IMG/VR virus record: IMGVR_UViG_3300044846_005229
Span: 62,001-126,000 of that record
Direction: 5' to 3' (one strand)
DNA: 64,000 nt
Part shown: piece by piece, positions 9,024 to 17,794 of the stretch
Layout of the letters: the number at the start of each line of letters is the position of its first letter
Numbering within the stretch: the stretch's first letter is position 1
Position numbers and translations under genes: made by a program
Notes under the pieces: model-generated
Seen by the model: the letters and a program-made list of their open reading frames with translations, nothing else
Told to the model about the DNA's origin: nothing
Databases searched by the model: none

Positions 9024-9515
9024 TCAGTATTCGCCGTTGTCAATGACTAAATTGTTTAGCAAATCGGCTAAGATTTTCTTGGTGATTAAGTCAGCATCAT
9101 CCAATGACCCGAACTTTTGAGCTACTGACGGGTTAGGTGTCCCATTAGCGTAATTATATTTATTGTTTGTCGTATAACTTCTAGGGGCATTTTCTTTGAT
9201 ATTTTCAGGGTTGACATTATTATAATTTTCATCCAACAAAGTAGGGAAACCAAACCACCATTTACCTAAGGTAACTTTATTGCCAGTGATAGGGGCTCCA
9301 GAAATGAATTCATTTAAGCTAGATAGCGTAGGCTGGTTGGTACCTAAAGTCATGTACCGACTATCCAATCCATTCGGACCAGCCGTAACCAGAGAGTTCA
9401 ATCCGAGGGGGTCATAGTGCCAATCTAAATCTTGGCCATCGAAAAATATTTGTTTTGCTCCGTTCAACCATGCACTGGTTACAATGACAGCGGAACTGTA
9501 AGTTGTCTTTGCCAT
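9024..9515 (-). CDS. Putative virion protein
   Basis: 163-aa ORF at the head of the baseplate operon; GAGG SD precedes the next gene; GGGTAAAA upstream. Confidence 0.55.
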   Translation of the reverse strand: MAKTTYSSAVIVTSAWLNGAKQIFFDGQDLDWHYDPLGLNSLVTAGPNGLDSRYMTLGTNQPTLSSLNEFISGAPITGNKVTLGKWWFGFPTLLDENYNNVNPENIKENAPRSYTTNNKYNYANGTPNPSVAQKFGSLDDADLITKKILADLLNNLVIDNGEY

Positions 9516-9557
9516 TATCCGTTGGTAATCCTGTTATGTATGTTTTACCCTGCCTAC

Positions 9558-9579
9558 AAAAAAGCCCCCTTTCGGGGGC
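9558..9579 (-). terminator. Rho-independent terminator after capsid-tube transcript
   Basis: Minus strand GCCCCC-GAAA-GGGGGC followed by T6. Confidence 0.8.
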
Positions 9580-9597
9580 AATTATTGAACCACAAAA

Positions 9598-10041
9598 TCA
9601 AGTTCTGTCCCAAATATTGACGGTCAGTTCCACTTCAATTTCCTGGACGTTTCCGCTGTCGCGATCAACGTTGGCAGTAGTGATTGATAGGAATTTACAA
9701 CCGTAGCAGGTGTACGCGCCACCGGCTGGAGCAGATCCTGTACCAGTACAGTCCCTAGGGGTTACTGTAACGGTAACATCTTGACAATTGTAGTTTAACC
9801 AGAAGTTCTCTAATTGCTTGAAGATCGTAGGATCATACGGAGCAGTAAGAGTAACATTATCTGCAGTTCGTGGGCCAACGACATGGTACTTTCGGTTTCC
9901 AGTGCCATTGGCGTATTCGCTCTTTTCGGAAGAATCTTTGATACCACTGAATTTTGTGAAAACAGCGATTAAAGACACCCCGTTGGGAGCTACGAACGAT
10001 ACCTCGTATTGCGACTTTGTTAAAGGTCTGAGAATTGCCAT
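9598..10041 (-). CDS. Tail tube protein (gp19-like)
   Basis: 147 aa with F.KFSGI, ADNVTLT, YTCYGCKF and DRDSGNVQEIEVELTV, the usual contractile tube pattern; strong SD AAAGAGGTG upstream. Confidence 0.75.
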   Translation of the reverse strand: MAILRPLTKSQYEVSFVAPNGVSLIAVFTKFSGIKDSSEKSEYANGTGNRKYHVVGPRTADNVTLTAPYDPTIFKQLENFWLNYNCQDVTVTVTPRDCTGTGSAPAGGAYTCYGCKFLSITTANVDRDSGNVQEIEVELTVNIWDRT

Positions 10042-10069
10042 GGGATCACCTCTTTATTTCCTATCCTTA

Positions 10070-13000
10070 TCAGGACAAGATGTTGGTGATCATAGCGCCA
10101 GAACCGATAAGACCAGATGCACCGAGGCCAACCAAGTTAACCACACGTTCGATGGTGATTTCAGCACGCACGACACGGCGTTCGCGAATGTAGTACTCCA
10201 ATTTGTTATCGTAAAGGCTCTTTATCCCTTGCTTCTGCATGTTTCTATGCAGTTCAGACTATATCATCGTTTTGTAAACAAAACGTCAGGCGCTCGTGGA
10301 TTGTTCACCTGTTCTAGGCTACTTAATCTAGTCGTTGGACCTTGCTTTTATCCCTAAAAGCCTTGGCTGCTGATTGCCTTGTGTTTCAAGGAATTCACTC
10401 CTGAAACCGTCAGGTTTCCCAGCAATTCACCTAATTTCTTTTTATGTCAGACCCCAGTAGTTAAGGACGGACAGCGGGTGTTCCTGTGAGTTGATCATTT
10501 TTGTTAGCGTGAAGGTTATTTATCCTCCACTTCTTCACATTTCTGCAAAGATCAGACTATATCTTCTTCCTTGAAATTCCTTATAAACCTTTGAAGAGTT
10601 TTTGACCTAAACCCGTTTTTCTTTGTGTCCAGATTTAATAATTGACCTAAGAGTATGTCCCCAGGTTTGTTATTTTCAATCCATACTTGTCTAATCTTAT
10701 CCTTCATTCCCTCCAAGTCTTTATTAGAGTTTGGGTGAGCATAACCCCTAGGGGTATTTGAAGAATTTAATCTTGCCTTTGAGATATTCATCCGCCTCTC
10801 TGGTGTCAATGATACACCTTTTAGAGACTCGGCAATACGAAAATTATGGGATTTAGACCTGACATAGTTTTTACGGAGAAATTCGTAGATTCTCTCACCC
10901 CCGACTGAACTCATTCTGAATACTGCATACCATAGACCTTCATGGTCAAGGTACATTTTATTCAAAAGGCGGTGAAGTATAAAGTGTTGCCTCAAGGTGG
11001 GGTAGCACAGATTTTCAGGGTCCGTTTTACTTCCGCCTAGGCATTTTGGAACTATGTGGTGCTCTTCAGTTTTGTGGGACACAGGACGAGTTTTGGGGCA
11101 TTGGTAAATTATTTGCCAATACCACTTTTCCCATTTATTAAGAAAGTGACATTCAAGGAGTGGGGCGCTCGTGGATGGGTTATTATTTTCGGTATTCACC
11201 ATCTAGTCGTTGAACCTTTTGACTACAACTCTATTATAGCATAGAGTCCGAAATAGTCAACTTGGCTGCTGATTACCATAGCTTTCAAACTCTCGTTTGA
11301 AGCCGTAGGCTTCCCAGCAATTCACCCCATTGATCTGCGGATCAGGCAGATAATTTGACGTTACCGTCAAACCACGCATTCAACTCGTTTGAAAGAAACG
11401 ATGTTATTAACATACGTGTAACTGAAGGACGGAGTCGCAGCATTAGCACCACCCGCAGGCATGATCGAATCAGAAGGGCCGTTGGGGCTGTAGAACAGGA
11501 GGATGCCATTGGCGGGGAAGACAGGCTGCAAGGAGCCGTCGTTGGCCAAATAACGCCCTTCAGCTACGCGCAGGCCACGCTCAAGACCGAAGTAGCGAGC
11601 GATGACATCTGTGTCGATGCTATCGGCGGAAGTGTACTTGATACGATCAAGGATCGCTTCGTTGGTCAGCAAGAGGTCGAAAACCGAAGTTCCAAGAACA
11701 GCGGAGTTCGGACGAATGCCGATCTGGTTGGCAACAGCACGCTTCAGAGTCAGGATGTCCTCAATGGGATTAGAGGTTGCACCAGACCATGCGGCAGGGC
11801 CAGTGGCTGTGCCATAAGCGGTGTTGAAGGCGGTCCAGGTTGTAAAACCAAGACCAGTTTGTGAGCCAGGAGTCCCATTGTAGGGCTCGTATGGATTGTA
11901 GCTGCCAGTCACTGAAACAGCTTGAGCAACGGTGTACTCGTAGCTGTTCATCCATTATGTTATCGCGAGGGCTCTTTATCCCTTGCTTCTGCATGTTTCT
12001 ATGCAGTTCAGACTATATCATCGTTTTGTAAACAAAACGTCAGGCGCTCGTGTCAGCTTCATTACTGTTCTAGTAGTATGCTGTTAGTCGTTGAACGTTC
12101 CGTCAATCCCTTGACGGCTTCGCTGCTGATTACCATAGCTTTCAAACTCTCGTTTGAAGCCGTAGGCTTCCCAGCAATTCACCCAATTTTCTAAATGAGA
12201 TCAATCTCATAGGGCCAATGTGTTTAGCCTAGACATCGCATTGCGAGTCTCGACGGCGCGTAGCATTTGTTAACTCAGCGGCTCTTTATCCACTGATTCA
12301 TTACCTTGTCGTTGGTAATGTTCAGACTATATTATTGCCCCACTATGTACACGATTACTGTACTTTGTAAGACATTGGGCGCTCGTGTCAGCTTCATTAC
12401 TGTTCTAGTAGTATGCTGTTAGTCGTTGAACGTTCGTTTTCTCCCGAAAACGCTTCGCTGCTGATTGCCCACGCGGGGGTTCCAGCAATTCACCCAATTT
12501 AGAGTGGACCTACGCTGCGATCGAAATCGTTCGTAAAAAATAATCCACTTGTGCAGGACCTTCTCCTGCGTTCTCGATTCAATAATGTTATCGCAAAGGC
12601 TCTTTATCCTTTACTTCTCTCTGTTTCCAGAAAGTTCAGACTATATCTTCACCCTTATCAGGGTGCTGGGCGCTCGTGTCAGCTTCATTACTGTTCTAGT
12701 AGTATGCTGTTAGTCGTTGGACCTTGCTTTTATCCCTAAAAGCCTTGGCTGCTGATTACCATAGCATCAAACTTTCGTTTGAAGCCGTAGGCTTCCCAGC
12801 AATTCACCCAGTTTTTCTATCAGTTTTTCAACTGACGGAGGCTATCGATCTAACCTCTTCCAAGGTTGTTATCACAAAGGCTCTTTATCCTTTGCTTCTG
12901 TAAATTTACCATCTTTACAGTTCAGACTATATCACCACCCATTTTTGAATGATATCCAATCTAAGTCTTTTGAAGGTACCCAACCTTGCTCAAATTTACG

Positions 13001-15850
13001 AACCATGCGGGACACAGAAGTTGATCTTCTTACTCCCACTAAAGTTGATAGCTTTACTCCACCACATCTATGGTGAAGCCACACATTATAAATTTGATCG
13101 GCGATCATCCAAAGATTTTTGGCTTGTCTACTTGTGGATGTAGCCGTGTTTCTATATGGGGGTATATTATAACCGTGCTTAGAAACAATACTCTTTCCTA
13201 AATTAGGGAGCTTTGTGTAAGCTTTAACTAAATGAGGATGCTTAGTGTTATTCAAAAACCTAGTTATACTTCTAGCTATAAACGGGGTCATTTCCATTTT
13301 ACCTAATAAAAGATGTAGAATGTAATGTTCCCTCGGAGTTAAAGTAACTTTCCAGTGTCGATCTATATGCTCCCAGTTTTTGGGAAATAAGCATTCTGGG
13401 ATGACGTGGTGTTCTTCTACTGAGCCTTTAAGATAGCTAGACCCGTTGGTCCTTCTTTTTTCGACTTTTTGGATTATACTCCAATACCACTTCTCATATT
13501 TACTTGAATAGTGGCAAGTTAGGTGTTGGGCGCTCGTGGATGGGTTATTATTTTCGGTATTCACCATCTAGTCGTTGAACCTTTTGACTACATTCCCATT
13601 ATAGCATGGGAACCGAAATAGTCAACTTGGCTGCTGATTGGCCATTAAGTTGGAGGCTTTCCAGCAATTCACCCTATTATTCTTACCGCGCTAACTAGGC
13701 AACGGCAAGGCCCAAAGATTTAGGCAATTCCCATGCGACCACTTCCTGCTCCAGAGCATAGGGCTCGGAGTCGTAACGGCTTTGGACGTAGGGGATGTTT
13801 GTCATTTGTTAACGCAAAGGCTCTTTATCCCTTGCTTCTACATGTTTCCATGTAGGTCAGACTATATCTTTGCCTTACATTACCATGTAGGGCATTGGGC
13901 GCTCGTGGATTGTTCACCTGTTCTAGGCTACTTAATCTAGTCGTTGAACCTTGCTTTTATCCCTAAAAGCCTTGGCTGCTGATTACCATAGCTTTCAAAC
14001 TCTCGTTTGAAGCCGTAGGCTTCCCAGCAATTCACCCAATTTATTTACGGCACAAACTAATTACCGTAAGCACGACGGAAGTCGTTGATAGCAACACCAT
14101 GTTATCGTAGAGACTCTTTATTCCCTACCTCTGCATGTTTCTATGCAGTTCAGACTATATCATCGTTTTGTAAACAAAACGTCGGGCGCTCGTGGATTTT
14201 TCACCTGTTCTAGGCTACTTAATCTAGTCGTTGAACCTTGCTTTTATCCCTAAAAGCCTTGGCTGCTGATTTCCCTCGCCTTTACGTTAGGGGTTCCCAG
14301 CAATTCACCCAATTTTACAACAGCAAGCTATTTACTGTTCCTTCAATTATGTTATCGCAGGGGCTCTTTATCCCTTGCTTCTGCATGTTTCTATGCAGTT
14401 CAGACTATATCATCGTTTTGTAAACAAAACGTCAGGCGCTCGTGGAGTTTTCATCTGTTCTAGATTACTAACTCTAGTCGTTGAACCTTGCTTTTATCCC
14501 TAAAAGCCTTGGCTGCTGATTACCATAGCATCAAACTTTCGTTTGAAGCCGTAGGCTTCCCAGCAATTCACCCAATTTTTCATAACCCCTCACGGAGTTA
14601 AGCGGCATATGGAATACCGAAGCGCAGGATACGTCCTGCACGAGTTGGAGTGTCTACCACCGGTGCTATGAATAATATACAAAACTTAACGTTTTGCTCT
14701 GCATGTTTCCATGCAGTTTAGACTATATCATCATCTTTGCCTAAGCAAAGAGTCGGGCGCTCGTGGAAAGATTATTCTTGGGTCAGTCACTTTCTAGTCG
14801 TTGAACCTTCTTACTTCACTCTTATTATAGCAACAAGAGACCCGAAGTAAACTTGGCTGCTGATTGCCTCTTTTGCATAGCAAAAGTAAGGTATCCCAGC
14901 AGTTCACCCGATTATTCGACAGGGGTCACCCCCTGAAGGAACCTCATTGATTCGCAATGTTGGTAGACGGTAGCATGAAACCTTGCGCGAGGGTGGTGAG
15001 ACATTTGTTAACGTAGAGGCTCTTTATCCCCTACCTCTCTTTGTTTCCAAAGAGTTCAGACTATATCATCGTTTTGTAAACAAAACGCCCGGCGCTCGTG
15101 GATTTTTCACCTGTTCTAGGCTACTTAATCTAGTCGTTGAACGTTCCGTCAATCCCTTGACGGCTTCGCTGCTGATTACCATAGCATCAAACTTTCGTTT
15201 GAAACCGTAGGCTTCCCAGCAATTCACCGGATTTTCTTTGTTAAAAACAAAGCCACTCCTTTAAATGGGCAATATGTTATCGCAAAGGCTCTTTATCCTT
15301 CACTTCTTTACATTTCTGCAAAGGTCAGACTATATCATCATCCTTTAACTCCCATGCTGAGGAGTCAAGGAGCTGGGCGCTCGTGGAGTTTTCATCTGTT
15401 CTAGATTACTAACTCTAGTCGTTGGACCTTGCTTTTATCCCTAAAAGCCTTGGCTGCTGATTGCCTCTTTTGCATAGCAAAAGTAAGGTGTCCCAGCAGT
15501 TCACCCAGTTTTCTGCCATCATTAAAATGACAGGGACCCTAATTAATCCACACCTGCGTAGGTCTGTTGTAGCATTATGTTATCGTAAAGGCTCTTTATC
15601 CTTCACTTCTTTACATTTCTGCAAAGATCAGACTATATCATCAACTTGCAAGCAAGTTGTCGGGCGCTCGTGGATTGTTCACCTGTTCTAGGCTACTTAA
15701 TCTAGTCGTTGAACGTTCGTTTTCTCCCGAAAACGCTTCGCTGCTGATTACCATAGCATCAAACTTTCGTTTGAAACCGTAGGCTTCCCAGCAATTCACC
15801 CGATTTTCATCCCAAGGTTACCCTTGAGCGGAACCGCCATGATTCATCAT
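10070..15850 (-). CDS. Major capsid protein (lambda gpE-like), spliced from 14 exons: 15850-15842, 15572-15546, 15269-15265, 15001-14950, 14672-14616, 14343-14334, 14094-14063, 13802-13722, 12860-12853, 12579-12543, 12263-12226, 11952-11414, 10495-10464, 10198-10070
   Basis: Joined exons total 1056 nt in one open frame, 351 aa: MMNLQQTYAGVDPILTTLAQGFMLPSTNIANFIAPVVDTPTRAGRILRFGKEQFAINDFRRAYGTNIPYVQSRYDSEPYALEQEVVAWELPEEVIENAGEGPAQVDLRAVETRNAMSRLMNSYEY...PSFSYTYQLTGTPAVRPEYYIRERRVVRAEITIERVVNLVGLGASGLIGSGAMITNILS*. The DP.LT..A.G, FGKE.F, W....SNPIEDI and PSF.YTY motifs and the position after portal-protease-decoration fit a gpE-type capsid. Confidence 0.9.
10199..10463 (-). ncRNA. Group I intron 13 of MCP (265 nt)
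   Basis: P/Q/R/S core; P1 UCCU/GGGG; terminal G. Confidence 0.9.
10552..11202 (-). CDS. Intron-encoded HNH homing endonuclease with NUMOD3-like DNA-binding motif
   Basis: EEHHIVPKCLGGS...PENL...RQHFILHRLL; RIAESLKG...RMNISKA; the last codons (DIV*) are the intron S element. Confidence 0.82.
   Translation of the reverse strand: MVNTENNNPSTSAPLLECHFLNKWEKWYWQIIYQCPKTRPVSHKTEEHHIVPKCLGGSKTDPENLCYPTLRQHFILHRLLNKMYLDHEGLWYAVFRMSSVGGERIYEFLRKNYVRSKSHNFRIAESLKGVSLTPERRMNISKARLNSSNTPRGYAHPNSNKDLEGMKDKIRQVWIENNKPGDILLGQLLNLDTKKNGFRSKTLQRFIRNFKEEDIV
11233..11260 (-). promoter_or_regulatory. Sigma70-like promoter inside intron 12 P6 region
   Basis: TTGACT-16nt-TATAAT with extended -10 TG, about 30 nt upstream of the HNH ATG. 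Confidence 0.65.
11953..12225 (-). ncRNA. Group I intron 11 of MCP (273 nt)
   Basis: P/Q/R/S core; P1 GGCU/GGCC; terminal G. Confidence 0.9.
12264..12542 (-). ncRNA. Group I intron 10 of MCP (279 nt)
   Basis: P/Q/R/S core; P1 GUGGAU/GUCCAC; P10 GCGUAG/CUACGC; terminal G. Confidence 0.92.
12580..12852 (-). ncRNA. Group I intron 9 of MCP (273 nt)
   Basis: P/Q/R/S core; P1 GAGGU/GCCUC; P10 UCGAU/AUCGA; terminal G. Confidence 0.9.
12932..13567 (-). CDS. Intron-encoded HNH homing endonuclease
   Basis: EEHHVIPECL...LTPREHYILHLLL HNH-type motif; lies inside intron 8. Confidence 0.8.
   Translation of the reverse strand: MVNTENNNPSTSAQHLTCHYSSKYEKWYWSIIQKVEKRRTNGSSYLKGSVEEHHVIPECLFPKNWEHIDRHWKVTLTPREHYILHLLLGKMEMTPFIARSITRFLNNTKHPHLVKAYTKLPNLGKSIVSKHGYNIPPYRNTATSTSRQAKNLWMIADQIYNVWLHHRCGGVKLSTLVGVRRSTSVSRMVRKFEQGWVPSKDLDWISFKNGW
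13598..13625 (-). promoter_or_regulatory. Sigma70-like promoter inside intron 8 P6 region
   Basis: TTGACT-16nt-TATAAT with extended -10 TG, about 30 nt upstream of the HNH ATG. Confidence 0.65.
13803..14062 (-). ncRNA. Group I intron 7 of MCP (260 nt)
   Basis: P/Q/R/S core; P1 UUACGGU/GCCGUAA; P10 GUUUGU/ACAAAC; terminal G. Confidence 0.92.
14095..14333 (-). ncRNA. Group I intron 6 of MCP (239 nt)
   Basis: P/Q/R/S core; P1 ACAGU/GCUGU; P10 AUAGC/GCUAU; terminal G. Confidence 0.9.
14344..14615 (-). ncRNA. Group I intron 5 of MCP (272 nt)
   Basis: P/Q/R/S core; P1 CGGU/GCCG; terminal G. Confidence 0.9.
14673..14949 (-). ncRNA. Group I intron 4 of MCP (277 nt; terminal A)
   Basis: P/Q/R/S core; P1 GAAU/GUUC; P10 AUGAG pairs with the 3' exon UUCAU; last base is A. 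Confidence 0.85.
15002..15264 (-). ncRNA. Group I intron 3 of MCP (263 nt)
   Basis: P/Q/R/S core; follows the 5-nt exon CCCAT; P1 CCAU/GUGG; terminal G. Confidence 0.88.
15270..15545 (-). ncRNA. Group I intron 2 of MCP (276 nt)
   Basis: P/Q/R/S core; P1 GGAU/GUCC; terminal G. Confidence 0.9.
15573..15841 (-). ncRNA. Group I intron 1 of MCP (269 nt, no ORF)
   Basis: P GGTGAATTGCTGGGAA, Q AATCAGCAG, R GTTCAACGACTA, S ATGATATAGTC; exon ends in U with a P1 U.G pair; terminal G. Confidence 0.9.
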
Positions 15851-15972
15851 AATAGATGATTTCCTTTTCTAGGTTGACTTCAAAGATTGCCTTGGCAATC
15901 TAACCCCAAAAGTTCGAAAACTCTAGGGTCACTGTAGTTATACCCACACTTTGCTAATGGAAGCCTAACCAT

Positions 15973-15999
15973 AAAAAAAGGAGCCCTTTTCGGAGCCCC
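15973..15999 (-). terminator. Rho-independent terminator between decoration gene and MCP
   Basis: Minus strand GGGGCTC-CGAAAA-GGGCTCC followed by T7. Confidence 0.65.
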
Positions 16000-16021
16000 A
16001 TAGTAAAAATTCAATCAGCAA

Positions 16022-16495
16022 TCAGTTGAAGGTTGCAATAACCAAGGTACGACGACCGATCGTAACAATCTCACGAATGAGTGGGGTGGTACCATCTAGG
16101 GTAACGTTCACACCGCTGTTGGCGGTTGGGAGTGCTTTACCGTCGGTACCAACAGAAAGGCGGCTACCAATGGTAAAAGCAGCGACAGCCGAAGCGCTTA
16201 CTTCGACGATCAAAGAGCCGCTACTAGCGACACTAACTTGACGGGCAGTTTGAGGTTGGGATAGTGCAGTCGGGATATAAGACTGGCTAACACCTACGAT
16301 GGCCCCGGTAAAGGATGTTAAATTACCAGGGGAGCAGACTAGATTAGCTCCGGCATAGGTTGCTTGAGCGACAACCGAAAATTCGGGGATTTCGACTACG
16401 CCAATACTACCAGCTTGGTTGTCGGTAGCGGCTTGCCAGGTGGAAGCATATCGGATGTACTGTTTTGCGTAAACGGGTGCAATGTTTAGACTCAT
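16022..16495 (-). CDS. Putative capsid decoration/cement protein
   Basis: 157 aa, rich in small residues, GAIVGVS...V..SGSLIVE...IGSRLSVGTDGKA pattern; immediately upstream of MCP. Confidence 0.6.
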   Translation of the reverse strand: MSLNIAPVYAKQYIRYASTWQAATDNQAGSIGVVEIPEFSVVAQATYAGANLVCSPGNLTSFTGAIVGVSQSYIPTALSQPQTARQVSVASSGSLIVEVSASAVAAFTIGSRLSVGTDGKALPTANSGVNVTLDGTTPLIREIVTIGRRTLVIATFN

Positions 16496-16584
16496 GATCT
16501 TTTTCTTAATATGTGTTGACTTTTGGTTTACTCTAGGACTTGTTTTTCACCTAGCTGATGTGATAATTGGTTTTTACCCAGCCT

Positions 16585-17001
16585 TTAGGTTAGGAGTTTT
16601 GATACTCTGGATGGCTGGAAGGTAAGGCTGAATTGGGCTACCTCTCCACTATCACGACTGAATTTTGGTAAGGAATAGCCAATTAGTTGGCACCCGGTGA
16701 GTCGATATTGGGAGGTTACTTCTATGCCATCCGTTGGGGTGATCCCAAACTCTAGTGTGAAGGAATCTTCGGACCCCTTCTTAGTACCAAGGTGTTCTAC
16801 ACAGTAGTTAATAAGATCTTTATAGTAAATCGGGTCAAAGCATGATCCAATCGTGATAGGGTCATATGACACTGTTGTGCCAATCTTGTGGGCCTTTAAT
16901 TCAGATGCAGTTATAAAACTTGCCCTATAATTCATTTCCCCGACATCCTGTGACAGGGAGATTTCTATGTGACATTCTGCAATTGGTCTAAGGATGGCCA
17001 T
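16585..17001 (-). CDS. Second tail-tube-like protein (divergent paralogue)
   Basis: Probable start is MAILRP at 17001, the same N-terminus as 9598-10041; shares Y.L.GC and RDSG.V..F.L. Confidence 0.65.
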   Translation of the reverse strand: MAILRPIAECHIEISLSQDVGEMNYRASFITASELKAHKIGTTVSYDPITIGSCFDPIYYKDLINYCVEHLGTKKGSEDSFTLEFGITPTDGIEVTSQYRLTGCQLIGYSLPKFSRDSGEVAQFSLTFQPSRVSKLLT

Positions 17002-17032
17002 TTTAGTTCTCTTTTTGTAAATTTGTGTAAAA

Positions 17033-17794
17033 TCAACGGTAATCAACGATACAGCGGCATCTGTCATAGCATCTGCATCTTTGTCCAGGAAGTGGTAAGG
17101 AACCGATTGGTTGCCAACCTAACTTCTCATATTCTTTGCAATCTCTGCAAGTTTTCTTATCTTTTTTGGCAACTCGCATCATTTCTTTATGGCCTTGTTC
17201 TTCCTTAACTAGGTAATCCCCCAGTTGGAAAAATGCGTAAGCTGGGGTAACAAGGTAGCGAGAAACCCTAGAAAAAACCCCTTGCCAGGTTTGCCCCACA
17301 CCGGAATCAATCGAATTCTGTATGGCATTCTGGACCTCGGGATCCTCCGAATCGTAATCAGGATCCTCTAAAATATCCCAATCATAGTCGCCAGATGGAC
17401 CTTTGGAGGCAAAATCCATTTCGTTACCAACGATGGAGATTACATTACTATCAAATCGAGCCTTTGTCACATCGAGGAATTTAAGTAATGGTGGCACCAA
17501 TTGTCCAACAACTGTTGGCCATGCTTTTTCCAATTTTGCTTTAGGCTTCGATGATGCTGACCCAAGGTAGACTCCTGCTAAAGATGCCTCTAAGGTTTTG
17601 TCAACCATGGCACGAGAAAACTCGTCCCACTTTATGTCTTTGTCCTTCAGAGACTTAACTAAAAGCTTAGAATCCTTAAGCATCATACTCTCTAGGTTCC
17701 CGATGGTTTTAGCTTTTTTGGCCAGGGATTCGGCATTAGAGAAAAAATCTCCCCTCCTTTTAGTGACAGAGCCAATCAGGGAGAGGAGATCCAT
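17033..17794 (-). CDS. Head morphogenesis protein (Mu gpF / SPP1 gp7-like)
   Basis: C-terminal D.KTCRDC...LPLPGQRCRCYDRCRC motif; located in the head module. Confidence 0.6.
   Translation of the reverse strand: MDLLSLIGSVTKRRGDFFSNAESLAKKAKTIGNLESMMLKDSKLLVKSLKDKDIKWDEFSRAMVDKTLEASLAGVYLGSASSKPKAKLEKAWPTVVGQLVPPLLKFLDVTKARFDSNVISIVGNEMDFASKGPSGDYDWDILEDPDYDSEDPEVQNAIQNSIDSGVGQTWQGVFSRVSRYLVTPAYAFFQLGDYLVKEEQGHKEMMRVAKKDKKTCRDCKEYEKLGWQPIGSLPLPGQRCRCYDRCRCIVDYR

What the first reader, a model, noticed from the sequence alone, without database searches (positions are those of the whole stretch)
10552..14851. Endonuclease promoter and start codon are built into the ribozyme core; intron 4 keeps an orphan promoter
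Seen: only the two HNH-bearing introns (8 and 12) carry a P6 module with TTGACT-16-TATAAT (extended -10 TG). Both ORFs begin inside the P7.1 stem with an identical 13 aa (MVNTENNNPSTSA), read through P3', and stop in or at the S element, yet their bodies are divergent. ORF-less intron 4 has the same arrangement (TTTACT-16-TATAAT, 14824-14851). Inference: a portable expression cassette uses the same sequence as RNA structure, promoter and coding region. It would allow early host-polymerase expression of nucleases independent of the late capsid transcript. Intron 4 probably lost its endonuclease.
Basis: partly seen in the sequence, partly recalled or inferred. Interest (0 to 1): 0.62.

Follow-up and report, generated by a model that had tools for sequence, protein, structure and literature searches.

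The report
Promoter-like nuclease cassette inside ribozyme core
Two self-splicing introns in a lake phage's capsid gene carry nuclease genes whose likely promoter, start codon and stop codon are all made of sequence that also folds the ribozyme; this is a compact variant of the way phage T4 introns express their nucleases, and transcription from it has not been shown.

Summary

**What is there.** The window's minus strand carries a major capsid gene cut by 13 group I introns.
- Only introns 8 and 12 hold HNH homing-endonuclease ORFs, and only they plus ORF-less intron 4 carry an extended P6/P6a with TTGACT (or TTTACT)-16-TGCTATAAT.
- Both ORFs start in the P7.1 stem, read through P3' and stop at the S element.
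- The proteins share 13 N-terminal residues but are 32% identical overall.

**Why the boxes look like promoters.**
- TGCTATAAT occurs 37 times on the coding strand of this phage and never on the other. Three of the 37 are the intron copies.
- In 38 distinct related modules from other viral contigs, the T, A and T of the -10 box and the -35 hexamer stay fixed 15-16 nt apart, while the surrounding hairpin covaries freely.

**New here.** The promoter spacer pairs with the P7.1 loop (codons 4-6) in a covarying pseudoknot. A transcript from the internal promoter would lack this strand.

**Intron 4.** It is an ORF-deleted derivative; relatives have a ~955-nt ORF-bearing intron at the same site.

**Limits.** No transcription start could be tested. 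I rate this a new variant of a known kind (T4 intron promoters, "core creep").

The parts
10496..11413 (-). Intron 12 (group I, 918 nt) with an HNH ORF. The 5' exon ends in U (11414) and the intron ends in G (10496).
   Evidence: Rfam hit 10533-11401. RNA-contig joint 10493>11412 with a 2-nt ambiguity. Sequence read.
11255..11260 (-). -35-like TTGACT, which is also the 5' strand of the P6 outer helix (pairs with 11226-11219).
   Evidence: The hexamer's base pairs are 74-95% invariant across 38 modules, while the next two pairs of the same helix covary freely.
11248..11253 (-). J6/6a strand TTTCGG inside the promoter spacer. It pairs with CCGAAA of the P7.1 loop to form a pseudoknot.
   Evidence: a cognate helix of 5-7 bp in 38 of 38 modules, with 17 distinct helix sequence pairs. 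Non-cognate and shuffled controls are shorter.
11233..11241 (-). Extended -10 TGCTATAAT. It spans the end of the P6a 5' strand, the P6a loop and the first two bases of the 3' strand.
   Evidence: 37 copies on the minus strand of the genome, 0 on the plus strand.
10552..11202 (-). HNH homing-endonuclease ORF of intron 12 (216 aa). ATG 11202-11200 lies in the P7.1 stem. Codons 4-6 (11192-11187, CCGAAA) lie in the pseudoknot. P3' is 11167-11163. The TGA stop 10554-10552 abuts the S element (ATATAGTC, 10562-10555).
12861..13721 (-). Intron 8 (group I, 861 nt) with an HNH ORF.
   Evidence: Rfam 46 bits. RNA-contig joint 12579>13722 with the 8-nt micro-exon retained.
13598..13625 (-). Intron 8 promoter-like element: TTGACT, 16-nt spacer, TGC-TATAAT. 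The spacer holds TTTCGGT, which pairs with ACCGAAA of the P7.1 loop.
12932..13567 (-). HNH ORF of intron 8 (211 aa). It has the same 13-aa leader. The TGA stop 12934-12932 overlaps the first A of the S element.
14673..14949 (-). Intron 4 (277 nt), an ORF-less derivative of an ORF-bearing intron. GTG 14790-14788 sits at the start-codon position. The pseudoknot is GGGTC 14843-14839 with GACCC 14784-14780. The 3' tail is atypical and ends in A.
14824..14851 (-). Intron 4 'orphan' promoter-like element: TTTACT, 16-nt spacer, TGC-TATAAT.

Best explanation
Introns 8 and 12 are mobile IA-type group I introns. Each has an HNH homing-endonuclease gene inserted in P8 that has 'crept' into the ribozyme core at both ends.

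Shown by sequence and comparison:
1. The ORF starts on the conserved (A/G)UGA motif in the 5' strand of P7.1, runs through the P7.1 loop and P3', and ends at stop codons supplied by the S element.
2. P6 is extended by a helix, an internal loop and a hairpin (P6a).
   - Its DNA reads as a sigma-70-type promoter of the class this phage uses throughout its genome.
   - The -35 box is the P6 5' strand, and the -10 box lies at the P6a loop and 3' stem.
3. The 5' internal-loop strand, which lies inside the promoter spacer, base-pairs with the P7.1 loop (codons 4-6).

Inferred:
- In the long capsid pre-mRNA the ribozyme folds. The start region is then locked in P7.1 plus the pseudoknot, so the nuclease is not translated and ribosomes do not unfold the core.
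- RNA polymerase starting about 7 nt downstream of the -10 box (near 11226, 13591 and 14817) would make a transcript without P1-P6a and without the pseudoknot strand. That transcript cannot form the ribozyme and leaves the start codon open.
- This is the logic of T4 I-TevI, moved into the ribozyme core.
- The nuclease would then nick or cut intron-less capsid alleles of co-infecting relatives and drive homing.

Intron 4 is the same element after deletion of its ORF.
For: **Match to the phage's own promoters**
- The intron boxes are the top three sigma-70-like sites in window 9500-17500.
- The genome is about ninefold enriched for consensus promoters. They lie almost all on the coding strand and are mostly intergenic.
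- TGCTATAAT occurs 37 times on the minus strand and 0 on the plus strand.
- The exact pattern TTGACT-N13-TGCTATAAT occurs six times. Two copies are introns 8 and 12, and two lie just upstream of tRNA genes.

**Conservation across 38 distinct modules**
- The first T of the -10 box is invariant, and the A at position 2 and the last T are at least 90% conserved.
- Spacing to the -35 box is 15-16 nt.
- The P6a stems turn over, loop size ranges from 3 to 10 nt, and the offset of the box to the loop ranges from -2 to +6.
- The base pairs under the -35 hexamer are conserved in sequence, while the adjacent pairs of the same helix covary.

**RNA structure**
- P6 and P7.1 are 98.8% paired, and 12 of 15 pairs show compensatory changes.
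- The pseudoknot is supported by covariation.

**ORF boundaries**
- 65 of 65 ORF-bearing introns start 0 or +3 nt after GACTAG.
- 59 of them stop within -3 to +10 nt of S; the other six are mis-called S positions or truncated ORFs.

**Association with ORF presence**
- 30 of 35 ORF-bearing introns are promoter-like, against 8 of 81 ORF-less ones. All 8 are ORF-deleted or ORF-broken copies.

**Adaptation to the resident phage**
- Relatives that lack the TGCTATAAT signal carry weaker boxes such as TATAGT and TATGAT.

**Signs of an active homing cycle**
- The same sites are empty, ORF-less or ORF-bearing in different relatives.

**Precedent**
- T4 intron endonucleases have their own promoters, with the RBS sequestered in longer transcripts (PMC2988022). 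ORF overlap with the core is known (PMC3073962, PMC3428280).
Against: - No transcription start, and no RNA that begins at the predicted sites, was observed. The RNA data are contigs only.
- One RNA contig spans the promoter (11116-11316), so intron RNA from upstream transcription exists.
- Spacers of 15-16 nt are shorter than the optimal 17, and TTTACT is only a 4 of 6 match to the -35 consensus.
- The modules share ancestry, so neither the ORF association nor part of the conservation is independent evidence.
- The extended P6 is also explained structurally by the pseudoknot.
- No good Shine-Dalgarno sequence is present; AAGG lies 13-16 nt upstream of the ATG.
- The P7.1 hairpin can still form in the short transcript.
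- Intron 4 keeps a perfect box without any ORF.
Confidence: 0.6

Rival explanations
1. The extended P6/P6a is only an RNA structural module. It would be a peripheral clamp, through its pseudoknot with the P7.1 loop, that stabilises a ribozyme carrying a ~600-nt insert in P8. Its likeness to a promoter would be a by-product of an AT-rich hairpin. The nuclease would be translated from the capsid pre-mRNA or from the excised intron.
For: - The pseudoknot and the helices are strongly supported by covariation.
- The module always travels with its P7.1 partner.
- Intron RNA that includes the ORF exists in metatranscriptomes, including a contig that joins the 3' terminal G to intron nucleotide 5, which is the signature of a circle.
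- ORF-less intron 4 keeps the module intact.
Against: - A purely structural constraint does not explain invariant T, A and T at a fixed 15-16 nt from a sequence-conserved hexamer, when loop size, stem sequence and register all vary.
- It also does not explain the exact match, including TGC, to a motif found 34 more times on the coding strand of this genome and never on the other strand.
Confidence: 0.25
2. The boxes are real promoters but do not serve the nuclease. They might be resident phage promoters captured by recombination, and they might drive downstream structural genes or a regulatory RNA. That would explain why intron 4 keeps one without an ORF.
For: - The intron 4 box is perfect although its ORF is gone.
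- The 42-kb structural block otherwise has only one strong site, at window 42476.
- T4 offers a precedent: promoters for essential genes are embedded in endonuclease genes (PMC2988022).
Against: - A transcript starting inside introns 4, 8 or 12 lacks the 5' exons, so it cannot yield capsid protein.
- The boxes co-occur with ORFs across many phages.
- Relatives with empty sites do without these boxes.
Confidence: 0.1
3. Chance resemblance: the boxes are neither functional promoters nor selected sequences.
For: Consensus scans give many weak hits. In window 9500-17500, 17 were found against 13.9 expected.
Against: - Three sites of 10-11 matches out of 12 plus TG sit at the homologous position of three introns.
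- About 0.35 sites with at least 11 of 12 matches plus TG are expected in the whole genome.
- The boxes are conserved across 38 diverged modules.
Confidence: 0.03

Closest known systems
[quoted passage not shown]
   Same: - The nuclease gene inside a group I intron has its own promoter within the intron.
- In transcripts from upstream promoters an RNA structure hides the translation start, and the internal-promoter transcript lacks part of that structure (PMC2988022).
- Translation into the core harms splicing (PMC3073962).
   Different: - The T4 promoters are phage middle or late types. They lie in the looped-out ORF region, not in a conserved paired element.
- T4 masks the start with a local RBS hairpin. 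Here the masking would be P7.1 plus a pseudoknot whose other strand is the promoter spacer.
- The T4 promoters are mapped by experiment. The ones here are not.
'Core creep': ORF overlap with the ribozyme core. Examples are I-PfoP3I of cyanophage Pf-WMP3, the SPO1 intron HNH ORF in P8 (I-HmuI), and the B. thuringiensis nrdF intron.
   Same: - Phage IA-type introns with HNH or GIY-YIG ORFs whose ends contribute to P6a, P7, P7.1, P7.2 or P8 (PMC3428280; Table 1 of PMC3073962).
- SPO1 also has its HNH ORF in P8.
   Different: - Here both ends are supplied by invariant core motifs: the start on (A/G)UGA of P7.1 and the stop at S.
- Different nuclease bodies are swapped between these fixed ends.
- No promoter built into P6 is mentioned in the passages of those papers that I read.
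T-even phage homing endonucleases matched by the two ORFs (the T4 Mob family is the likely group, from my own knowledge of that family)
   Same: Both ORFs match phrog_655 'homing endonuclease' and align at about 30% identity over 93% of their length to T4-like phage homing endonucleases, some annotated HNH. They carry an HH...N...H motif.
   Different: - The T4 Mob genes are free-standing and mostly promoter-less (PMC2988022).
- These two ORFs are intron-borne, and their first ~15 residues are dictated by RNA structure.

Membership tests
Group I intron (Rfam RF00028), IA-like | Covariance-model match covering P1-P9, with P/Q/R/S elements. | tested here: met
   - Intron 12 scores 57 bits (cut-off 50) and intron 4 scores 93.7 bits.
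- Intron 8 scores 46 bits, just under the cut-off because of its insert, but its core is near-identical to that of intron 12.
Group I intron (Rfam RF00028), IA-like | 5' exon ends in U, the intron ends in G, and removal restores the host reading frame. | tested here: inconclusive
   - Met for introns 8 and 12: U before the intron, terminal G at 12861 and 10496, and exon joints seen in RNA contigs that restore the capsid frame.
- Not met for intron 4: it ends in A at 14673 and lacks the conserved 3' tail.
- The joined RNA form could also come from intron-less alleles.
Group I intron (Rfam RF00028), IA-like | Self-splicing activity. | not testable with these tools
   This needs in vitro transcription and splicing. 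The contig joints and one circle-like joint are only suggestive.
HNH (His-Me finger) homing endonuclease | Sequence match to the family and the HH...N...H motif. | tested here: met
   - phrog_655, E 5e-30 and 6e-21.
- tblastn to T-even phage homing endonucleases.
- EEHHIVP...N...H aligns with the pyocin AP41 HNH motif only weakly, E 0.6.
- Pfam HNH_5 is below its cut-off at 13 bits.
HNH (His-Me finger) homing endonuclease | Site-specific nicking or cleavage of the intron-less allele. | not testable with these tools
   Empty, ORF-less and ORF-bearing states at the same sites in relatives fit homing, but there is no assay.
Sigma-70-type promoter | -35 and -10 hexamers with a 16-18 nt spacer, with or without an extended -10 TG. 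| tested here: met
   Introns 8 and 12 match 11 of 12 consensus positions and intron 4 matches 10 of 12. All three have a 16-nt spacer and TGC before the -10 box. They match this phage's own motif.
Sigma-70-type promoter | Transcription initiates about 7 nt downstream of the -10 box. | not testable with these tools
   Only assembled RNA contigs were available, and these cannot show starts.
T4-type intron-ORF regulation (internal promoter plus masked start) | The start region is masked by a structure that the internal-promoter transcript cannot form. | tested here: inconclusive
   - The anatomy fits. The pseudoknot strand 11253-11248 lies upstream of the predicted start.
- P7.1 itself can still form in the short transcript.
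- There are no functional data.

The most novel reading that the evidence does not exclude
One ~110-nt stretch would carry three overlapping codes and act as a transcript-isoform switch.
- Read from the capsid promoter, it folds into P6/P6a, P7.1 and a pseudoknot. The ribozyme is then active and the nuclease start codon is buried.
- Read as DNA by host RNA polymerase, the same P6/P6a is a promoter. Its transcript begins inside P6a, so it lacks the ribozyme's 5' half and the masking strand and serves as nuclease mRNA.

Because invariant core motifs supply the start (P7.1) and the stops (S), the chassis would act as a general landing pad into which different nuclease bodies are swapped. The -10 box would be tuned to the promoter dialect of each resident phage.
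Probability: 0.4. Interest if true: 0.72.

Novelty: new variant of a known kind. Interest (0 to 1): 0.6.

Why it matters
- If the P6 boxes are active promoters, this is the most compact known answer to a standing problem for mobile introns: how to express a nuclease from inside a ribozyme without translation destroying the fold.
- It would extend the T4 paradigm to host-type promoters embedded in a conserved paired element.
- It gives a natural example of DNA, RNA and protein constraints on the same bases.
- It helps explain how one capsid gene can hold 13 introns in a lineage where the same sites are empty, ORF-less or ORF-bearing in different phages.
- It offers a simple, testable system: reporter fusions and compensatory mutants.

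Tried and rejected
- **RNA evidence for starts.** The look-up of sequencing runs gave only lake and freshwater metatranscriptomes kept as Logan contigs. Laying four of them on 4,801 letters, under the 6,000 limit, showed exon joints, unspliced intron 4 and a circle-like joint. It cannot show 5' ends.
- **Known phage records.** megablast of the region against the phage collection found only short ribozyme-core matches in Bacillus and Staphylococcus phages.
- **Cellular genomes.** The genome-contig scan with the Q/-35 pattern gave 78 hits, none in an intron context, so all are chance. It gave no host clue.
- **Solved structures.** There is no useful relative; the best hit is the pyocin AP41 HNH motif at E 0.6.
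- **Autorepression as in I-TevI.** By eye I saw no likeness between the promoter region and the exon junctions. Introns 8 and 12 share the promoter region but sit at different sites. I rejected this without a formal test.
- **Decay of the boxes after ORF loss.** Two of 8 ORF-less modules have a degenerate -35 box, which is too few to conclude anything.
- **Searches not run.** I did not use the large protein searches, structure prediction or complex prediction, because family scans and the viral-contig loci answered the question.
- **Spliced model.** The capsid sequence was compared exon by exon, by reference. The joined sequence was not built or searched.
Full report
**Context**

The window is bases 62001-126000 of a complete 279,339-bp IMG/VR phage genome with direct terminal repeats and 46.5% GC. 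All large ORFs lie on the minus strand.

Between about 10070 and 16000 the minus strand carries a major capsid gene.
- It matches Pfam Phage_cap_E and phrog_1005.
- The largest exon is 59% identical to the capsid protein of Synechococcus phage S-CBWM1.
- Exon peptides map in order onto that protein.
- The gene is cut by 13 group I introns. Three more introns lie at genome 20378-21454.

The RNA runs that hold parts of the region are lake and freshwater metatranscriptomes. A freshwater cyanophage is therefore likely, but the host is inferred only.

Reading the minus strand, ten capsid introns have a short P6 hairpin of three sequence types. Introns 8, 12 and 4 instead have an extended P6.

In intron 12 the extended P6 reads CCAAG-TTGACTA-TTTCGG-ACTCTAT-GCTATA-ATAGAGT-TG-TAGTCAA-AAGG. 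Folding gives an outer helix, an internal loop and an 8-bp hairpin, P6a.

The promoter scan ranks exactly these three places first in window 9500-17500:

| Intron | -35 box | Spacer | -10 box | Before -10 | Consensus matches |
|---|---|---|---|---|---|
| 12 | TTGACT 11260-11255 | 16 nt | TATAAT 11238-11233 | TGC | 11 of 12 |
| 8 | TTGACT 13625-13620 | 16 nt | TATAAT 13603-13598 | TGC | 11 of 12 |
| 4 | TTTACT 14851-14846 | 16 nt | TATAAT 14829-14824 | TGC | 10 of 12 |

- Each starts with ATG directly after the P7 strand GACTAG. The TAG of that strand closes the frame upstream.
- No other in-frame start exists before the conserved nuclease domain, which begins near residue 22.
- The ATG lies in the 5' strand of the single helix between P7 and P3', called P7.1 here (GAUGG/CCAUC).
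- The ORF then crosses the P7.1 loop and P3' (CGCCC, pairing with GGGUG) and fills P8.
- It stops at S. In intron 8 the TGA overlaps the first A of ATATAGTC. In intron 12 it is the TGA right after TAGTC.
- The proteins share MVNTENNNPSTSA and are 32% identical overall.
- Both are HNH-type homing endonucleases: phrog_655 and relatives among T-even phage homing endonucleases.
- They are the only two of this family in the genome.

**Is the promoter likeness more than chance?**

Three independent lines say yes.

1. *This phage uses such promoters.*
   - The genome has 39 sites with at least 11 of 12 matches to TTGACA-N16-18-TATAAT, against 4.6 expected. Twenty of them also have TG, against 0.35 expected.
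   - Almost all lie on the coding strand and are mostly intergenic. Many sit 6-80 nt before an ORF start, and they cluster at genome 130-195 kb among small ORFs.
   - Their consensus includes TGC before the -10 box.
   - TGCTATAAT occurs 37 times on the minus strand and never on the plus strand, against about 1 expected per strand. Three of the 37 are in introns 4, 8 and 12.
   - TTGACT-N13-TGCTATAAT occurs six times. Two copies are introns 8 and 12, and two lie just upstream of tRNA-Thr and tRNA-Arg.
   - The 42-kb structural block otherwise has one strong site at its head, at window 42476.

2. *Comparative data.*
   - Pattern scans of viral contigs brought in about 170 loci, many holding the same capsid gene with varying intron sets.
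   - A scan keyed on the P7.1/P3' motif, not on P6, gave 38 distinct extended-P6 modules.
   - In their alignment (A1) the P6a region is otherwise hypervariable. Yet the first T of the -10 box is invariant, and the following A and the last T are at least 90% conserved. This is the conservation profile of a sigma-70 -10 element.
   - The box lies 15-16 nt from the -35 hexamer in 36 of 38 modules. By contrast, P6a loop size ranges from 3 to 10 nt and the offset of the box to the loop from -2 to +6.
   - In the P6 outer helix the six pairs under the -35 hexamer keep their sequence in 74-95% of modules. The next two pairs of the same helix covary freely.

3. *Adaptation to the resident phage.*
   - Three relatives of 190-277 kb lack both the TGCTATAAT signal and consensus promoters.
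   - Their intron boxes are weaker: TTTACT with TATAGT, TATGAT or TACAAT.
   - The boxes nearest to consensus sit in the phage whose own promoters are nearest to consensus.

**Association with ORFs**

Among 116 distinct introns of this family in all loci, 30 of 35 ORF-bearing ones pass a strict promoter filter, against 8 of 81 ORF-less ones (Fisher p = 2e-15).
- The five ORF-bearing exceptions carry the same module with one deviant base.
- The eight ORF-less cases all keep the start-codon-bearing P7.1 and are ORF-deleted or ORF-broken copies.
- These counts are not phylogenetically independent, and 58 loci were picked with a pattern that contains the -35 box. I therefore treat this as description, not proof.

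P6 and P7.1 are well supported: 98.8% of cells are paired, and 12 of 15 pairs have compensatory changes, against 6.4 in shuffles. Where the start is at +3 (ATG or GTG), its first base covaries with its P7.1 partner (A-U or G-C), so the start codon is under RNA pairing constraint.

The 5' internal-loop strand of the extended P6 is complementary to the P7.1 loop in every module, and the two covary.
- Examples are TTTCGG/CCGAAA (introns 8 and 12), GGGTC/GACCC (intron 4), GTCGA/TCGAC, GGGTA/TACCC, AGGGT/ACCCT, TTGGG/CCCAA and AGGGG/CCCCT.
- The cognate helix is 5-7 bp in 36 of 38 modules and 4 bp in the other two, with a mean of 5.5. The mean is 3.75 for non-cognate pairs and 3.4 for shuffled loops.
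- This pseudoknot explains why the extended P6 always travels with its own P7.1.
- It also places one strand of an RNA contact inside the promoter spacer and the other inside codons 4-6.

The leader peptides come in two frames (...NNNxSTSA and ...FPRAPDS) over the same P3' bases. The leader is therefore dictated by RNA, not by protein function.

The (A/G)TGA motif of P7.1 is also conserved in distant ORF-less introns. The start codon thus reuses a pre-existing core motif.

**Generality of the cassette**

- In 65 ORF-bearing introns the ORF always starts 0 or +3 nt after GACTAG.
- 59 of them stop within -3 to +10 nt of S; the remaining six are mis-called S positions or truncated ORFs.
- The S region supplies stops: ATA-TAG and GTC-TGA in two frames, and TGA in GATGATATAG in the third.
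- The nuclease bodies fall into 12 clusters at 60% identity. The same cluster occurs behind different leaders, and the same leader occurs before different clusters.

**Intron 4**

At the junction of exons 4 and 5, relatives show four states:

| State at the site | Loci |
|---|---|
| Empty | 15 loci |
| 277-nt ORF-less intron identical to the window's | 4 loci |
| 262-nt ORF-less intron | 1 locus |
| 951-964-nt ORF-bearing intron | L024, L039, L045, L054 |

The ORF-bearing versions share P6, P7.1, P3' and the first codons after P3' with intron 4 (alignment A2). Loss of the ORF is well supported.

**Mechanism**

I commit to the mechanism given under Best explanation, with 0.6 confidence.
- Shown: the anatomy, the conservation patterns and the match to the phage's own promoter class.
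- Inferred: promoter activity, the start position, relief of masking, and homing.
- Timing: 'early' expression is plausible, because the promoter class is densest among small ORFs, but it is not established. Independence from the capsid pre-mRNA is the sturdier part of the claim.

**Comparison with what is known**

[quoted passage not shown] Their RBS hairpins form only in longer transcripts (PMC2988022).
- Translation into the core impairs splicing, and overlap of the ORF with the core ('core creep') is documented for SPO1 (HNH ORF in P8), the B. thuringiensis nrdF intron and others (PMC3073962).
- In cyanophage Pf-WMP3 the I-PfoP3I ORF spans P6a to P7.2 (PMC3428280).
- I found no description of a host-type promoter built into P6/P6a, of this pseudoknot, or of this capsid-intron family. 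The library is limited to open papers.
- I therefore rate it a new variant of a known kind.

**Limits**

- No transcription-start data could be obtained.
- The RNA joints may partly come from intron-less alleles.
- The host is unknown.
- The joined spliced capsid sequence was not built or searched; exons were compared one by one, by reference.

Noticed in passing
window 10070-16000 (- strand): One ~1-kb capsid gene holds 13 group I introns with very short exons between some of them. An 8-nt exon (12860-12853) and a 9-nt exon (AGGAACAGT, between introns 5 and 6) are retained in RNA contigs. A ~5-nt exon is guessed between introns 2 and 3. The introns are mosaics of a few P6 and P7.1/P7.2 module types.
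   Followed up: partly
window 10496-10571 joined to 11326-11409 (run X2, record 7): A metatranscriptome contig joins the 3' terminal G of intron 12 (10496) directly to intron nucleotide 5 (11409). This is the signature of a circularised group I intron that has lost its first 4 nt. That contig carries a different ORF 3' end, so it comes from a relative. It is a single contig at depth 4.
   Followed up: partly
window 14673-14728 (- strand): Intron 4 lacks the conserved 3' tail (GGATAAAGAGCC...GATAACAnnTG) present in the other 12 introns and, at the frame-restoring junction, ends in A rather than G. Its sequence is identical in 5 contigs. It is the only intron of the window itself whose full unspliced form assembled in all four RNA runs; introns 5, 6, 8 and 9 had little or no coverage. 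It may splice poorly or by an unusual 3' site. G14685 would give an in-frame 4-aa insertion.
   Followed up: partly
whole genome G000; e.g. window 42476, 52985, 60669 and genome 130-195 kb: The phage has about 55 strongly conserved sigma-70-type promoters with a consensus close to ggggTTGACa-N17-aTGCTATAAT, all on the coding strand. TGCTATAAT occurs 37 times on that strand and 0 on the other. Three related phages of 190-277 kb with the same capsid-intron family lack this signal.
   Followed up: partly
loci L019-L076 (capsid genes of related viral contigs): Each intron site is empty, ORF-less or ORF-bearing in different relatives. For example, the gap from exon 12 to exon 14 is 30, 359, about 940 or about 1207-1232 nt. 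This is a textbook picture of the homing cycle (gain, ORF decay, loss) inside one capsid gene.
   Followed up: partly
window 11219-11226 and 11203-11208 (- strand): In introns 8 and 12 the P6 3' strand (GUAGUCAA) mimics the S element and is predicted to pair with the P7 strand GACUA in the short transcript. It could be an alternative pairing or a chance result of TTGACT resembling CGACTA.
   Followed up: no
genome 20378-21454 (outside the window; loci L009, L012, L013): Three more ORF-less group I introns of a different P6/P7.1 type interrupt another gene of the same phage. The gene was not identified.
   Followed up: no
locus L084:1-300: A distant intron with the same ATGGTGA P7.1 and a ~830-nt P8-region insert (no intact ORF was called from P7.1) has no P6 promoter-like box. 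It has TATAAATA, the T4 late-promoter consensus as I recall it, in its P5 region. This hints that the promoter type may follow the resident phage.
   Followed up: no
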